From Anaeramoeba ignava BMAN (Eukaryota > Protista > Anaeramoebae): DNA of 64,000 bases. Under the pieces are notes generated by a model. It was not told where the DNA came from. It saw nothing but the letters and a program-made list of their open reading frames with translations, and made no database searches. Where the stretch lies: contig JAPDFW010000117.1 of the NCBI GenBank assembly GCA_028826165.1, forward strand, positions 1 to 64,000, given 5' to 3'. Every line of letters begins with the position of its first letter. Position 1 is the first letter of the stretch. The position numbers were made by a program, and so were the translations under genes. Below, one piece after another: positions 20,983 through 27,496 of this stretch.

Positions 20983-23900
20983 ATGAATGAAAAAGAAGAA
21001 CCAAAAGTATCAAGAATAAAAAGGGGAATTCAAAGAAGAAGTCAATCAATATTTAAAAAACCACCAAAAACAGAGTTACCAAGATTTGATTTGGAAAAGC
21101 CTCAATTGAACCGAACAATAAAAACAAGTTCCAGATCGATATCAATGCTTGACGTTCAAAAAATCAATGAAAAAACAAGTTCTGTTCGTCAAAAAATAAA
21201 AAATTATTTACAACCGCAATTCAAACCTCAAGAAGAAAATGAACAGAATGAACAACAGCAAAAAGATGCTAAAAGGCTTTACGGTAAATTGGCTAAGGAT
21301 AGATCTCCTCGTACTACTCGTAATTCTAAGCAAGTTCATTTTGCTGTTGAATCAACTCCAACTAATTCTCCTCTTCACGGTCAAAGTCAAAATCAAAGTC
21401 AAAATCAAAGTCAAGAAGGTATGATTTAATATAATTTTAACTAATATTTTTTATTTTTTTATTTATTTATATTTACTTATTTAATTTATTTACATTTATT
21501 TTTTTATTTATATTTACTTTTTTATTTACATTTACTTTTACATTTACATTTACATTTACATTTACATTTACATTTACATTTACATTTACATTTACTTTTA
21601 TATTTACTTTTTTATTTACATTTACATTTACATTTACATTTACTTTTACATTTACATTTACTTTACTTTTTTATTTATATTTATATTTACATTTACATTT
21701 ACTTTTACATTCAAAACAAAATTCCAATTAAAATATAAAATTAAAATTAAAATTAAAATTAAAATTAAAATTAAAATTAAAATTAAAATTAAAATTAAAA
21801 TTAAAATTCAAATTAAAATTAAATTAAAATTTAAAATTAAAATTAAAATTAAAATTAAAATTAAAATTAAAATTAAAATTAAAATTAAAATTAAAATTAA
21901 AATTAAAATTAAAATTAAAAATTAAAATTAAAATCAAAATTAAAATTGAAATTAAAATTAAAATTAAAATTAAAATTAAAATTAAAATTAAAATTAAAAT
22001 TAAAATTAAAATTAAAATTAAAATTAAAATTAAAATTAAAATTAAAATTAAAAATTAAAATTAAAATTAAAATTAAAATTAAATTTAAAATTAAAATTAA
22101 AAATTAAAATTAAAATTAAAATTAAAATTAAAATTAAAATTAAAATTAAAATTAAAATTAAAATTAAAATTAAAAATTAAAAATTAAAATTAAAATTAAA
22201 ATTAAAATTAAAATTAAAATTAAAATTAAAATTAAAATTAAAATTAAAATTAAAATTAAAATTAAAATTAAAATTAAAATTCAAAATTAAAATTAAAATT
22301 AAATTAAAATTAAAATTAAAATTAAAATTAAAATTAAAATTAAAATTAAAATCAAAATTAAATTTAAAATTAAAATTAAAATTAAAATTAAAATTAAAAT
22401 TAAAATTAAAATTAAAATTAAAATTAAAATTAAAATTAAAATTAAAATTAAAATTAAAATTAAAATTAAAATTAAAATTAAAATTAAAATTAAAATTAAA
22501 ATTAAAATTAAAATTAAAATTAAAATTAAAATTAAAATTAAAATTAAAATTAAAATTAAAATTAAAATTAAAATTAAAATTAAAATCAAAATCAAAATTA
22601 AAATCAAATTTAAAGTTATACAATTAAGAAAACAACTAGAAGATAAAGAAAAAGAATTAAGAACAGTAGCTGAATTAGGATTATTAGTATCAAAAGAAAA
22701 CAAAGCATTAATAGCTGAAATTGAAGATTTACAAAATCAATTATTAAATCATGAAGAAGATGAAAATATGCAAACAGAATTACAAGAAATTATTGATGAA
22801 CTTGAAGCTGAAAAAGCTGAACTAACCAAAAAAAATCAACATTTAGGTAGGCAAATAGAAGAAGCAAGTAAAACAAATTATTCTTATCTTCAACAGATTA
22901 ATCAATATGAAGAGGATATTGAAGATTTTAAAAAATCTGATAAACAATTATCAAGATTGAAATTGGAAAATACTGAATTAAAAAATGAAATTGATAATTT
23001 ACAATTACTTAAAAATCAAATCAAAACAATGTCAGAAGAAAAACAAGATCTTAAACAACAAATTTCAAAATTAGAAGTTGATAAAAGTAAAATTAAAATT
23101 AAAATTTAAAATTAAAATTAAATCAAAATTAAATTTATAATTAAAATTAAAAATTAAAATCAATATTAAAATTAAAATTAAAATCAAAATTAAAATTAAA
23201 ATTAAAATTAAAATTAAAATTAAAATTAAAATTAAAATTAAAATTAAAATTAAAATTAAAATTAAAATTAAAATTAAAATTAAAATTAAAATTAAAATTA
23301 AAATTAAAATTAAACTAAAATTAAAATTAAAATTAAATTTAAAATTAAAATTAAAATTAAAATTAAAATTAAAATTAAAATTAAAATTAAAATTAAAATT
23401 AAAATTAAAATTAAAATTAAAATTAAAATTAAAATTAAAATTAAAATTAAATTTAAAATCAAAATTAGCGTATTTATTAAAATCAAATTCAGAACTAAAT
23501 GATCAAATCGATCTTCTAAATGTAGATTATGACAGTTTAAAACTTGAATTAACCAATTTACAAACACAAGGAAGAAAATCAAATCAATATCAAATAGAAA
23601 TTCAACAACTTAAAACACAACTTGATTGGATGGAAAAATTTACAGTTTCATCAACAAAATTAGCAGAAACAGCAGAAACTATAATAGAAATTCATGTTAA
23701 AGATATAATGGATCAAGCAGATGAAGAAAAAAAAATGAATGAAGAAGCAAAAAGAACAATTTCTTTTTTGGTTCATAAACTTCCACTTCATTTTAAAAAA
23801 AAAACACTTGAAGAAAATAAAAAATTTTTTGAAGATGAATTTCATGATACTGATAGTGATTCTGATGATATTAATAGTGATAGTGATTTTGTTGAGAATG

Positions 23901-26900
23901 ATAATGTTCAAAATGGTGATGATTTTGGTTGGTTTGAATTGGATATTGATAAAGGAAATGAAGAAAATGGATTTTTAACTCTTTATGAAGATTCAAGAAG
24001 AAAACTTATTTATCTTGTAATTTTAAATTCAAATTAAATTAAATTAAAATCAAATTTAAAATTCAAAATTAAATTCAAAATTAAATTAAAAATTAAAATT
24101 AAAATTAAAAATCAAAATTAAAATCAAAATTAAATTCAAAATTAATTTATAAAATTAAATTCAAAATTAAAATTAAAATTAAAATTAAATTCAAAATTCA
24201 AAATTAAATTCAAAATTCAAAATTAAATTCAAAATTAAATTCAAAATTAAATTCAAAATTAAATTCAAAATTAAATTCAAAATTAAATTTAAAATTAAAT
24301 TCAAAATTAAATTCAAAATTAATTTATAAAATTAAATTCAAAATTAATTTATAAAATTAAATTCAAAATTAAATTCAAAATTAAATTCAAAATTCAAAAT
24401 TAAATTCAAAATTAAATTCAAAATTAAATTCAAAATTAAAATCAAAATTAAATTCAAAATTAAATTCAAAATTAAAATCAAAATTCAAAATTAAATTCAA
24501 AAAAATTAAAATTAAATTCAAAAAAAATTAAAATTAAAATCAAAATTAAATTCAAAATTAAATTTAAAATTAAATTTAAAATTAAATTCAAAATTAAAAT
24601 CAAATCAAAATTAAAATTAAATTCAAAATTAAATTCAAAATTAAATTCAAAATTAAATTCAAAATTAAATTCAAAATTAAATTTAAAATTAAAAATTAAA
24701 TTTAAAATTAAATTTAAAATTAAAATCAAAATTAAATTCAAAATTAAAATTTAAAATTAAATTTAATTTAAAAATTAAATTTAAAAAAATTTAAAATTCA
24801 AAATTAAAAATTAAAAAAATAAAATTAAAAAAAATTCTAAATTTATTAGTCTTATTTACTTGTTTTTGGAAAACTTTATTTGGATATGGAAACACAAAAA
24901 AATATCTCAGAAAAAGAAAAAAATGAATTACATGAAGAAATTCAAGAATTACAAAGAAAATTAAAACAAGAAATTGAAAAAAATAATAATTTAGAACAAA
25001 TTCTTCATAAAAAACTTAATGAATCTGAAAGTGGAATGAATGAACTTCAAAAAGAAAATGCAAGAAAAATTCAACTTTTAAATGATGAATTAAATAAATC
25101 TAAAGAAAATGAAAAAAAACTTCAAAAAGATTTAAATGCATCAGAAGAAAATAACCGACAATTACAAAATCAAATTGAAGAATTAAAACAATCACTTGAA
25201 AACCAAAAACAATTAACTGAAAGACAACAAAATTTAAACGATTCACTTAAAAAACAATTTGAAGAAAAACAGAAAGAAATGGAAGAAAGATTCCAAAAAG
25301 AAAAAGAAGTAAAAATTCAAAGAAAAACAATCTAGATTTTAAATTTAATTTTATAAATTTGTTTTTAATTTATTTTTGAAAAAGGAATTCGAGAATAAAA
25401 TCAAAAATCTTTTGGCAAATATCCAAAAACTTGAAGAAGAAAAGAAAAATCTTGATAACTTAATCAACGGAAAATATCAATTTGAAATTGACGATTATAA
25501 ATTCAAAATAAAACAACTCGGAGATAAAATTCAGGAATTAAACGACGTATTAAAAACTCAAGAAAACAAATTCAAAAAGGAAATTGAAGAAAATAACGAA
25601 AAATATGAAGATGAAATCAAATCATTAAACAAAAAATTGGAACAAGAAAAAAACTCAAACGAAAAATTAGAAGAACAAATAAAATTTCTTAAGAAACAAC
25701 TTGAAGACGAAGAAAAAATGCGGAAAAAATTGGAAGAACAAAAGAAGGAATTAGAAACCAATTTGCAAATAGCAAACGCAAGAGCAAATGCAGAATATCA
25801 AGAAAAAAAATCACTTGAAGAAGAGAATGTAAAATTAGAAAAGGAAATCAAAAAACTTCGTGCAGAAATTGCGGAATTAAAGAAAAAACTAGAAGAAGCA
25901 CTTTCAAAGGAGCCTCAAGTAGTAATAAAAGAGATATCAATACCGGTTCAGAGCGAACCTGAACCACCAGAAAGAGAAATAGATCTTTTGGAGCAATCAA
26001 TGATTGAGTATATCAATTTTATGTTCAAATACGACCGAGATTTAATTCATATTTTGCCAATGGGAGTTAAAACTCTTGATCTCATCTCGGCAAGTTTGGA
26101 CGGGATTCTTTTGTGCAAATTAATCAATCACGCAATTCCAGGAACAATTGACGAGCGTGTAATAAACATGAACAACCCTTCAGAAGAACAAATAATGGAA
26201 AATATTGTTCTTTGTTTAAATTCGGCAAAATCAATAGGTTGTAATGTTATTGGGATGAAAGCCGAGGAAATTATGAAGGGAGAAGAAACAACAATTCTTA
26301 ATCTTGCATGGGAAATCACAAAGATGGGGTTGCTTTCAAATGTTTCTTTTGAAAGACATCCCGAATTAATTCAACTTTGTGTTGATAAAGAAACAATTGA
26401 GGATATCCAAAAATTATCTCCCGAAGATGTTCTTCTGAAATGGTTCAACTATCATCTCAAGAAAGCCGGGCATCTCCGAAGAGTTTCAAACTTCAACGAA
26501 GACATCCGCGATTCTGAGAACATTGCGGTGCTTCTTCATCAACTCAGCCCTAAAAGATGCCCGATCCAAGGCTTTATCGAAGAAAGTGATTTCGATGTTC
26601 GCGCGGAACTTGTTGTTGCAAATGCAGCAAAACTTAACTGCAAATTCTTCATCTCAACACGCGCGATTGTTTCGGGTCAATATGAACAACTTAATTTGGC
26701 GTTTTTGGCTAATTTATTCCATACTCGCTCAGGTCTGCAAGCAACCCAACAAGAAATTTCAAAAACAGCACTTCAATACGACAAAAGTGGAACAAGAGAA
26801 GAACGCGCGTTCCGCATTTGGATCAACTCAATGGGTATCGAGCCCAAAGTGAATAATCTCTATGAAGATCTCAAGGACGGGATTATATTACTCAAGGTCT

Positions 26901-27496
26901 TGGATCACATTGAGCCTGGTTGTGTTTCTTGGAAAAGAGTCAATCTCCATCCTCCAAATATTTATAAAAAACTTGAAAACTGCAATTATGTCGTTGATAT
27001 CGGCAAAAAATTGGGTCTTCATTTAGTTAATATCTCCGGAAATAACATCCACGAAGGAAATAAAACACTCGTTCTTGGCTACGTTTGGCAGGCAATGGAA
27101 TATCACATCAAATCCATTTTGACAAAACTCAAAGTGATCCAAAGTGGGAAAATAACAGACAGCGTAATGGTCAAATGGGCAAATGAAAAAGTTTCAAATG
27201 CAGGCAAAAAAACTCAAATTCGGAACTTTCGAGATCGATCTATTCGCAACGGTATTTTCTTTGTTGATCTTGTTTATGCTATAAAACCTCAAGTTGTTAA
27301 TTATAGTTTTGTTCAAGATGGAAGTTCTGATTCTGAATGTATGAATAATGCTCTTTATGCAATCTCTTTATGTCGTAAAATTGGTGCTGAAATTTTTGTT
27401 ATTCCTGAAGATATTGTTGAAGTTAAACCGAAAATGCTTCTTACTGTTGTTGGTGAATTGATGAGAGTTTATAAGGAAATTCATCATAAAAATTAA
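20983..27496 (+). CDS. ~1341-aa long coiled-coil protein with a C-terminal fimbrin/plastin core (4 calponin-homology domains), 5 exons
   Basis: Exons 20983-21418, 22616-23086, 23469-24016, 24850-25308, 25385-27496, all GT-AG with matching phases. Fimbrin motifs [82 protein letters not shown]. Confidence 0.88.

What the first reader, a model, noticed from the sequence alone, without database searches (positions are those of the whole stretch)
20983..27496. Dynein-adaptor-like CC1-box coiled coil fused to a fimbrin actin-bundling core
Seen: five exons splice in phase into one ~1341-aa protein with a disordered N-terminus, several hundred residues of coiled coil, then a complete 4-CH fimbrin core with no EF-hand headpiece. 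The coil begins with LRKQLEDKEKELRTVAELGLLVSKENKAL (~22624-22710), which the ORF track misses. Established: this resembles the CC1 box (AAxxG) at the start of the coil in dynein activating adaptors (CDR2 DLQLAAELGKTLLDRN, BICD2 KIQAAEYGLAVLEEK, HAP1/TRAK KERDLELAARIGQSLL, Spindly). Inference: one polypeptide could couple dynein/dynactin to bundled actin, an architecture I do not know from any described protein. Caveat: the first Ala is Val here, a change known to weaken LIC binding in animal adaptors.
Basis: partly seen in the sequence, partly recalled or inferred. Interest (0 to 1): 0.82.

Follow-up and report, generated by a model that had tools for sequence, protein, structure and literature searches.

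The report
Long coiled-coil fimbrin of Anaeramoeba
This gene of the anaerobic amoeba Anaeramoeba ignava encodes an actin-bundling fimbrin core on the end of a very long coiled coil whose first helix carries a conserved motif resembling the dynein-binding "CC1 box", but it lacks the box's key first alanine and the other hallmarks of a dynein adaptor.

Summary
Five exons (20983-27496, + strand) join in phase through GT..AG introns into 1341 codons. The product has a disordered basic N-terminus, about 550 coiled-coil residues with a hinge, and a complete 4-CH fimbrin core with no EF-hands. A spliced RNA-derived contig confirms intron 4. Paralogues, a public transcript and Anaeramoeba flamelloides orthologues support the other junctions.

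The genome is Anaeramoeba ignava. It holds five such genes, and A. flamelloides has the same architecture. No relative of the N-terminal module turned up outside the genus.

The motif [V/L]-A-x-x-G-L-x-[V/L]-[S/T]-[K/R]-x-N is the most conserved spot of the N-terminal 400 residues. It sits in the same heptad register as the BICD2 CC1 box. The genome also has a dynein-1 LIC with an FFxxVL helix, dynactin p150 and p62, and a canonical adaptor (AAQIG, then LFSEV 255 residues later).

Against a dynein adaptor:
- The core 'd' alanine, which forms the LIC pocket, is Val or Leu in every member.
- One paralogue has lost both Ala and Gly.
- There is no Spindly motif and no CC2/HBS1 box.
- The coil breaks about 25 residues after the Gly.
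- No profile similarity to HAP1_N, BicD or solved adaptors.

Most likely this is a dimeric long-tether fimbrin with an unidentified N-terminal partner. I put the dynein-LIC reading at about 0.18.

The parts
20983..21418 (+). Exon 1: start codon and 145 aa of basic, Ser-rich, disordered N-terminus (ends in phase 1)
   Evidence: ORF and donor GTATGA at 21419. 56% identical to the N-terminus of the C126 paralogue and transcript P0121. No Pfam domain.
21419..22615 (+). Intron 1, made of (ATTTAC)n and (AAAATT)n microsatellites; absent in paralogue C126
22616..23086 (+). Exon 2: first coiled-coil segment (157 codons with the split ones)
   Evidence: Paralogues at 72%, 40%, 36% and 34% identity in the same genome. 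Alignment A2.
22666..22701 (+). Conserved CC1-box-like motif VAELGLLVSKEN, with V at heptad d, A at e, G at a and N at the next a
   Evidence: Invariant R..A..GL.....N cluster in A3. Register. Present in 4 of 5 A. ignava paralogues and in A. flamelloides P0122 and P0124.
23087..23468 (+). Intron 2, (AAAATT)n microsatellite
   Evidence: The junction is reproduced in transcript P0121 (LDK-R-SLLKS).
23469..24016 (+). Exon 3: end of the first coil, conserved W-x-E-K helix, acidic disordered loop, start of the hydrophobic K-R-K-L-x-Y-L helix (hinge module)
   Evidence: The AF2 model of the paralogue shows low confidence or disorder here.
24017..24849 (+). Intron 3, AAATTCAAAATT-type microsatellite
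   Evidence: The junction LIYL|SYLLVFGKLYL is matched by P0121, P0001 and P0005.
24850..25308 (+). Exon 4: second coiled coil (153 aa)
   Evidence: Covered by contigs of run X1.
25309..25384 (+). Intron 4 (76 nt), confirmed as spliced
   Evidence: Joint 25308->25385, skips 76, GT..AG, contig depth 114.6 in run X1.
25385..25972 (+). Exon 5, first part: about 195 aa of coiled coil leading directly into the fimbrin core
25973..27496 (+). Exon 5, second part: complete fimbrin core (4 CH domains = ABD1 + ABD2) and stop codon
   Evidence: Pfam CH, 4 stretches, E 1.3e-72. Arabidopsis fimbrin core 1PXY E 2.8e-130, S. pombe fimbrin 1RT8, human plastin-3 7R94.

Best explanation
The locus is one expressed gene of an Anaeramoeba-specific family of long coiled-coil fimbrins. 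Shown: a 1341-aa product with a disordered basic N-terminus, a 52-residue first helix carrying a strongly conserved motif with an atypical core (Gly and Asn at 'a' positions), a short break, a long helix of about 190 residues, a hinge with an acidic loop, about 350 more coil residues, and an intact four-CH fimbrin core in place of the usual EF-hand-plus-core layout. Inferred: the coil forms a parallel dimer. The molecule would then carry two actin-bundling cores at one end of a tether of up to about 80 nm (549 coil residues at about 0.15 nm each) and two copies of the N-terminal motif at the other end. It would link or space actin bundles and attach them to a partner recognised by that motif. 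The partner is not identified; dynein LIC is one candidate, but the motif lacks the defining first alanine. Calcium control through EF-hands is absent. Regulation may lie instead in the basic, Ser-rich N-terminus, which is speculative.
For: Gene model. Domains. Family: five genes with the N-module plus fimbrin core in this genome; A. flamelloides orthologues of 1274-1307 aa. A search of 1.84 billion representative proteins found no relative of the N-module outside Anaeramoeba: 7 hits, of which three short or unnamed ones are weak coil matches. The invariant cluster E.E.R..A..GL.....N is the densest in the 400-residue N-module. AF2 helix and break pattern. No profile match to any dynein-adaptor family. 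No Spindly or CC2 motif.
Against: Dimerisation, orientation and tether length are inferred from sequence only. A conserved Gly at a core 'a' position with Ala at 'e', in the CC1 register and at the coil start, is exactly what a LIC pocket would need in part, so the partner may after all be dynein. Nothing is known about localisation.
Confidence: 0.6

Rival explanations
1. It is a true dynein-dynactin adaptor with a variant CC1 box (phi-A-x-x-G). The N-terminal helix binds the LIC FFxxVL helix, the following coil lies along dynactin, and the fimbrin core makes bundled actin the cargo or anchor.
For: 7 of 15 identities with the BICD2 CC1 box as quoted. Identical heptad register. Position at the coil start. 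Conservation across two species. LIC helix FFQDVL matches the essential F447/F448/L451/L452 pattern of human LIC1. Dynactin p150 and p62 are present. A conserved helix follows a disordered loop 271-291 residues after the Gly, close to the roughly 260-residue spacing reported for adaptors. Radial microtubules from an acentriolar centrosome are described in Anaeramoeba.
Against: The 'd' alanine, which with the Gly forms the LIC cavity (PMC7655957), is Val or Leu in every member. A-to-V double mutants of BICD2 and Spindly lose LIC1 binding (PMC5379953). Paralogue C93 lacks both Ala and Gly. No L-phi-x-E-phi motif lies 120-420 residues downstream and there is no Q..[HY] box, while the canonical adaptor on C46 of the same genome keeps AAQIG and LFSEV at +255. 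A coil break, or a Pro with a 4-residue deletion, lies 23-27 residues after the Gly. hhalign probability against the C46 adaptor is 2.6%. No adaptor appears in the PDB profile search. In Nesprin-2, putative CC1 and Spindly motifs were not sufficient for direct recruitment.
Confidence: 0.18
2. The conserved motif is purely structural, for example a trigger, register-setting or flexibility site of the coiled coil (Gly and Asn at 'a' positions), and binds no partner. The protein is simply a dimeric fimbrin cross-linker.
For: Asn at 'a' positions commonly sets the register of a parallel dimer (general coiled-coil knowledge). The strictly invariant positions in all five A. ignava paralogues are K..N..L..EIE.LQ.Q, downstream of the Gly. 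Paralogue C93 keeps these while losing Ala and Gly.
Against: The invariant Arg, Ala, Gly and Leu at non-core and core positions, kept between species whose surrounding coil has diverged to E about 1e-5 to 1e-8, point to a surface under selection, which suggests a ligand.
Confidence: 0.17
3. The fusion is a gene-model artefact: a coiled-coil gene and a fimbrin gene lie side by side and are not one transcript.
For: The only transcript spanning all junctions (P0121) is a mosaic of two paralogues and stops before the CH domains.
Against: E5 is one open frame running from about 195 coil residues straight into the CH core. The E4-E5 splice is seen in RNA-derived contigs. All junctions keep phase and homology in five paralogues and in A. 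flamelloides proteins of 1274-1307 aa.
Confidence: 0.03

Closest known systems
Fimbrin/plastin (Arabidopsis fimbrin core 1PXY, S. pombe Fim1 1RT8, human plastin-3 7R94)
   Same: Complete four-CH core (ABD1 + ABD2) aligned end to end, E 2.8e-130 to 2.1e-118 and about 45-50% identical to many eukaryotic fimbrins.
   Different: There is no EF-hand headpiece. Instead there are about 840 N-terminal residues of disordered region, coiled coil and hinge. A coiled coil would make the protein a dimer, whereas classical fimbrins bundle as monomers (general knowledge).
CC1-box dynein activating adaptors (BICD2, BICDL1/BICDR1, Spindly, HAP1, TRAK)
   Same: The motif lies at the start of a long coil in the same heptad register. 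A (e), G (a), L, V and flanking E residues are shared with BICD2 residues 39-53. A long coil and a downstream break follow at a comparable distance.
   Different: The first Ala (d) is Val or Leu. There is no Spindly motif and no recognisable CC2/HBS1 box. The coil breaks about 25 residues after the Gly. No profile similarity was found, and the cargo end is an actin-bundling core.
Canonical HAP1_N-type adaptor of the same genome (G000 contig C46, about 150.6-152.2 kb, minus strand; L018)
   Same: Same organism and the same presumed LIC partner. A coiled-coil protein with the motif near the coil start.
   Different: It has the textbook DLLLAAQIGQSLLQTNYSL and NSLFSEVRKV 255 residues later. HAP1_N scores 34.7 bits in the genome scan and 33.5 bits on the ORF translation, straddling the 33.9-bit cut-off (sequence). 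The fimbrin family matches neither HAP1_N nor this protein.
Nesprin-2G
   Same: One polypeptide with an N-terminal CH actin-binding domain and a distant region that recruits dynein-dynactin (PMC11310688).
   Different: It is built of spectrin repeats, anchored by KASH, has a paired-CH rather than a fimbrin core, and recruits dynein through BicD2. Its own putative CC1/Spindly motifs are not sufficient, which is a caution for motif-only calls.
Cortexillin / alpha-actinin-type dimeric CH cross-linkers
   Same: CH-domain actin binding combined with a dimerising rod, giving a bivalent cross-linker (general knowledge, not tested here).
   Different: Those have one ABD per chain at the N-terminus. 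Here a full two-ABD fimbrin core sits at the C-terminus of a much longer rod.

Membership tests
Fimbrin/plastin | Four tandem CH domains forming two actin-binding domains | tested here: met
   Pfam CH, 4 stretches, E 1.3e-72. 1PXY chain residues 12-500 aligned to query residues 6-493, E 2.8e-130.
Fimbrin/plastin | N-terminal EF-hand calcium-binding headpiece | tested here: not met
   No EF-hand family in any of the five exons at E <= 1. Many protist fimbrins of about 510-530 aa also lack it.
CC1-box dynein activating adaptors | A-A-x-x-G, with the first Ala at core 'd' and Gly at core 'a' creating the LIC cavity (PMC7655957) | tested here: not met
   Gly at 'a' and the second Ala at 'e' are present. 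The 'd' residue is Val (window, C126, A. flamelloides) or Leu (P0001, P0002), never Ala. C93 has T and T in place of A and G.
CC1-box dynein activating adaptors | Motif at the N-terminal start of a long dimeric coiled coil | tested here: met
   The motif is 17-28 residues into E2. In P0001 and P0002 the Gly is residue 28 of the protein. AF2 helix 7-58.
CC1-box dynein activating adaptors | CC2 box / HBS1 (Gln, then His/Tyr or an acidic patch) about 30 residues after the Gly on a continuous coil | tested here: not met
   No Q..[HY] in any member. There is an indel, a Pro in P0001 and P0002, and an AF2 break at +23 to +27. The looser 'Gln plus acidic patch' definition is trivially met in any E/Q-rich coil, so it says nothing either way.
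CC1-box dynein activating adaptors | Spindly motif L-phi-x-E-phi about 230-290 residues downstream, after a coil break | tested here: not met
   No match 120-420 residues after the Gly in any member. The control C46 adaptor has LFSEV at +255. A conserved but different helix (K-R-K-L-x-Y-L) follows a disordered loop at +271 to +291.
CC1-box dynein activating adaptors | Profile similarity to HAP1_N, BicD or solved adaptor chains | tested here: not met
   No match that supports membership in the Pfam scans. The only HAP1_N hit, in P0001 at E 0.075 and 12.7 bits, aligns to profile positions 167-271, away from the CC1 region. hhalign against the C46 adaptor gives 2.6%. The PDB profile search returns only generic coils.
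CC1-box dynein activating adaptors | Direct binding of LIC helix 1 and activation of dynein-dynactin motility | not testable with these tools
   No multimer prediction or experiment is available. The partner exists: LIC C-terminal exon with FNQFFQDVLSDKKK; its best PDB relative is DYNC1LI2, E 1e-14.
CM1 / centrosomin motif 1 (Pfam Cnn_1N) | Match to the CM1 profile at a consistent position, above threshold | tested here: not met
   Sub-threshold hits in 3 of 6 sequences scanned (24.1, 17.2 and 10.7 bits; cut-off 28.5). The two strongest place the conserved Gly at different profile positions (about 9 and about 37), so this is coil noise.

The most novel reading that the evidence does not exclude
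The phi-A-x-x-G helix is a lineage-specific LIC-binding variant of the CC1 box. These proteins would then be dynein (or dynein-dynactin) adaptors whose cargo end is a fimbrin core. They would let the radial microtubule array of Anaeramoeba pull on or position bundled actin directly, with a non-canonical pointed-end contact such as the conserved K-R-K-L-x-Y-L helix about 280 residues downstream.
Probability: 0.18. Interest if true: 0.8.

Novelty: new variant of a known kind. Interest (0 to 1): 0.45.

Why it matters
Fimbrins are usually compact, monomeric, EF-hand-regulated bundlers. A family in which the headpiece is replaced by about 800 residues of coiled coil with a conserved terminal motif is a different way to use the fimbrin core, probably as a long dimeric tether. 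It has expanded to five genes in one small amoeba genome. If the motif does bind dynein LIC, this would be a direct, single-polypeptide coupling of the dynein machinery to bundled actin. It would also be a natural example of a CC1 box working without its first alanine, which bears on how adaptors are recognised from sequence. Either way, the locus comes with a ready internal control: a canonical AAxxG/LFSEV adaptor and a conserved LIC helix in the same genome.

Tried and rejected
Only E4-intron 4-E5 could be laid, so introns 1-3 rest on homology and on a public transcript.
- A word-based search with the N-module of P0001 found only P0001 and P0002, so the exhaustive profile search was used instead.
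- A MAFFT alignment with exon fragments as separate rows misplaced the E3 pieces (A1) and was dropped. Contiguous database proteins of the paralogue (P0121, P0131) served as proxies.
- The CM1 (Cnn_1N) lead was rejected as inconsistent coil noise.
- The protein-atlas feature search gave only generic coil clusters, with a Spindly fragment cluster at rank 18, score 0.92 and 118 shared features, which is below the level that indicates kinship.
- HOOK was not found in the genome, and BicD gave only 24 bits, below its cut-off.
- The search of earlier findings returned nothing bearing on this gene.
- No paper in the library holds both 'Anaeramoeba' and 'fimbrin'.
Full report
**What is there**

The window is extremely AT-rich. 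Between 20983 and 27496 on the + strand, five open segments join through GT..AG introns in matching phase:
- E1 20983-21418
- E2 22616-23086
- E3 23469-24016
- E4 24850-25308
- E5 25385-27496

The total is 4026 nt, or 1341 codons plus stop. Introns 1-3 (1197, 382 and 833 nt) are almost pure (AAAATT)n-type microsatellites, and intron 4 is 76 nt. Where a contiguous sequence was needed I used database proteins of the paralogues.

**Transcript and homology support for the model**
- The only public run holding the locus (X1, stored as contigs) contains a contig that skips exactly 25309-25384 (GT..AG). It therefore holds spliced RNA-derived sequence and confirms the E4-E5 junction.
Introns 1-3 therefore have no read evidence.
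- They are supported otherwise. In the paralogue on contig C126 the E1- and E2-homologous parts are one uninterrupted ORF.
- The A. ignava Trinity transcript ORF P0121 and the GenBank protein P0131 carry the same E2/E3, E3/E4 (…YL|SYLLVFGKLYL…) and E4/E5 (…QKEKE|EFENK…) joins.
- The same continuity is seen in A. ignava P0001, P0002 and P0005 and in A. flamelloides P0122 and P0124.
- E5 itself runs without interruption from about 195 coil residues into the CH domains.

**Organism and family**

Contigs C112 and C64 of the window's own assembly encode the N-termini of the NCBI proteins P0001 and P0002 of Anaeramoeba ignava letter for letter. The genome (42.8 Mb, 147 contigs) is therefore A. ignava.
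- It holds about ten fimbrin-core genes.
- Five of them (C118 = this window, C126, C93, C112, C64) carry the same N-terminal module upstream.
- An exhaustive profile search of 1.84 billion representative proteins with the E2 module found seven hits. Two are A. ignava family members. Two are A. flamelloides 'fimbrin-1/-2' proteins of 1307 and 1274 aa with the same layout. The other three are weak matches to short or unnamed sequences, one of them in nine scattered stretches of an 1851-aa protein.
- The word-based search with the N-module had found only the two closest paralogues.
- The architecture therefore appears specific to Anaeramoeba and conserved across at least two species. It is present in public annotation only as 'fimbrin', and no paper in the library holds both 'Anaeramoeba' and 'fimbrin'.

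**Domains**

E5 contains four CH stretches (E 1.3e-72), and no exon has an EF-hand. The core aligns end to end with the Arabidopsis fimbrin core 1PXY (E 2.8e-130), S. pombe fimbrin 1RT8 and human plastin-3.

Everything upstream gives only sub-threshold generic coiled-coil hits. An AF2 model of the paralogue's N-module (built on P0121:140-530 with alignment A3, mean pLDDT 73.8) shows:
- a helix at 7-58
- a break at 59-62
- a helix at 63-249
- low-confidence short helices and a disordered acidic loop to residue 309
- a helix resuming at 310

**The motif**

Its core, VAELGLLVSKEN, is at 22666-22701. Across paralogues and species it reads:
- TVAELGLLVSKEN (window, C126)
- TLAT[LI]GLELSKRN (P0001, P0002)
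- EVA[MK]AGLRV[ST][KR]EN (A. flamelloides)

In the five-sequence alignment A3, 9 of the 22 invariant columns fall within 36 columns around it (L17, E25, E27, R29, A32, G35, L36, N42, L52). This holds even though the surrounding coil has diverged so far that the A. flamelloides proteins score only E 9e-9 and 9e-6.

The best heptad register is the same in all members: V/L at d, A at e, G at a, V/L at d, N at a, L at d. That is the register Lee et al. 2020 describe for BICD2 39-EKIQAAEYGLAVLEE-53, with A43 at d and G47 at a (PMC7655957). The window shares 7 of those 15 residues.

Only 6 Gly occur in the 549 coil residues. The pattern A..G..[LIV]...N..[LIV] appears in 0.08% of shuffles. The resemblance is therefore real, positioned as in adaptors, and under selection.

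**Is the partner there?**

Yes.
- Two nearly identical DLIC genes lie on C113 and C59, matching Pfam DLIC at up to 66.8 bits. Their best solved relative is cytoplasmic dynein 1 LIC2, E 1e-14.
- Their C-terminal exon contains …TDTFNQFFQDVLSDKKK…. This is the FFxx[L/V]L pattern whose Phe and Leu pairs (F447/F448, L451/L452) are essential for adaptor binding in human LIC1 (PMC6336354).
- Dynactin p150 (66.5 bits) and p62 (52 bits) are present.
- The same genome encodes a textbook CC1-box adaptor on C46: …DLLLAAQIGQSLLQTNYSL…, scoring 34.7 bits for HAP1_N in the genome scan and 33.5 bits on the ORF translation (cut-off 33.9), with NSLFSEVRKV 255 residues after the Gly. That matches the average spacing of about 260 residues reported by Gama et al. 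2017.

**Why I do not file it as a CC1-box adaptor**
1. The first alanine is the core 'd' residue which, with the Gly, makes the cavity for the LIC helix. Here it is Val or Leu in every family member and never Ala. A-to-V double mutants of BICD2 and Spindly lose LIC1 binding, and a CC1-box Ala-to-Val mutation in fly BicD is hypomorphic.
2. Paralogue C93 keeps the downstream K..N..L..EIE.LQ.Q but has Thr in place of both Ala and Gly.
3. No L-phi-x-E-phi motif lies 120-420 residues downstream in any member, and there is no Q..[HY] box. The organism's canonical adaptor keeps both motifs in textbook form, so its dynein and dynactin surfaces are probably conventional.
4. The coil is interrupted 23-27 residues after the Gly, where the heavy-chain contact should lie, by an AF2 break, an indel, and a Pro in P0001 and P0002.
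5. No profile-level similarity was found. The Pfam scans gave no supporting HAP1_N or BicD match; the single HAP1_N hit, in P0001 at E 0.075, aligns away from the CC1 region. hhalign against the C46 adaptor gives 2.6% and does not align the motifs. A profile search of all PDB chains, which include adaptor-containing dynein-dynactin entries such as 6F1T and 7Z8F (listed), returns only generic coils.
6. There is a published caution: putative CC1 and Spindly motifs in Nesprin-2 were not sufficient for direct dynein recruitment (PMC11310688).

On the other side, recent work stresses that HBS1 and Spindly motifs are weakly defined and that adaptors are hard to recognise by sequence. A conserved helix also follows a disordered loop at a conserved +271 to +291. 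I therefore keep the dynein reading alive at about 0.18.

**Best reading**

This is a dimeric, long-tether fimbrin. Two four-CH cores sit at one end of a rod of up to about 80 nm. At the other end is a conserved N-terminal docking or structural motif preceded by a basic, Ser-rich disordered region. The function would be to link or space actin bundles and attach them to a partner not yet identified. The steps shown are the gene structure, the domains, the family and the conservation. Dimerisation, geometry and the partner are inferred.

**Novelty**

This is a new variant of a known kind: a fimbrin with the EF-hand headpiece replaced by a long coiled-coil module. It is lineage-specific and undescribed in the literature searched, though present in automatic annotation.

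Noticed in passing
G000 contig C46, about 150.6-152.2 kb, minus strand (L018:142-1767:-): A canonical CC1-box dynein adaptor candidate in A. ignava. HAP1_N scores 34.7 bits in the genome scan and 33.5 bits on the ORF translation (cut-off 33.9). It has DLLLAAQIGQSLLQTNYSL and a Spindly motif NSLFSEVRKV 255 residues downstream. It would serve as a positive control for any LIC-binding test in this organism.
   Followed up: partly
G000 C113:101500-108000 (L007) and C59:467500-474500 (L008): Two nearly identical copies of the dynein-1 light intermediate chain gene, each with a C-terminal exon carrying FNQFFQDVLSDKKK (a LIC helix-1-like motif). Dynactin p62 is also present twice (C112, C16). This suggests segmental duplication, uncollapsed haplotypes or polyploidy.
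   Followed up: partly
window 20983-27496 compared with G000 C126:~557.9-562.9 kb (P0131): Mosaic divergence between the two closest paralogues: E1 56%, E2 72% and E3 65% identical, against E4 93%, E5 coil 94% and CH core 96%. This is consistent with gene conversion of the 3' two-thirds or with much faster evolution of the N-module. Intron 1 of the window gene is absent in C126.
   Followed up: partly
P0131 (KAJ5066885.1, 1778 aa) and P0121 (EukProt c21782_g1_i1, 760 aa): The GenBank model of the C126 paralogue is fused to about 470 N-terminal residues that begin with a signal-peptide-like stretch and contain a hydrophobic segment. They look to me like a separate membrane-protein gene (ribophorin-I-like; not tested), so this is a probable merged gene model. 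The Trinity transcript begins at MAYNLQKKP instead. That transcript is itself a mosaic, C126-like in E1-E3 and 100% window-like in the E5 coil, and it ends before the CH domains.
   Followed up: partly
window 24973-25631 in run X1: A low-depth (4.4) contig joins 24973 to 25631 with 23 unrelated A-rich letters in between and no GT..AG ends. This is probably an assembly chimera across similar K/E-rich coil-coding repeats rather than an isoform.
   Followed up: no
window 20983-21418 (E1) and the N-termini of P0121, P0122 and P0124: The disordered N-terminus is basic and rich in R-x-x-S/T patterns (RRSQSIF, RSISML; RTMSMK and RTMSLK in A. flamelloides). These could be kinase sites that regulate the adjacent conserved helix. 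This is pure speculation.
   Followed up: no
G000 C36, C67, C64:1216538, C105, C104: Five further fimbrin-core genes without this N-module. Some carry other coiled-coil extensions (P0003 789 aa, P0005 1094 aa, P0004 577 aa). This is a large expansion of fimbrins for a 43-Mb genome.
   Followed up: no
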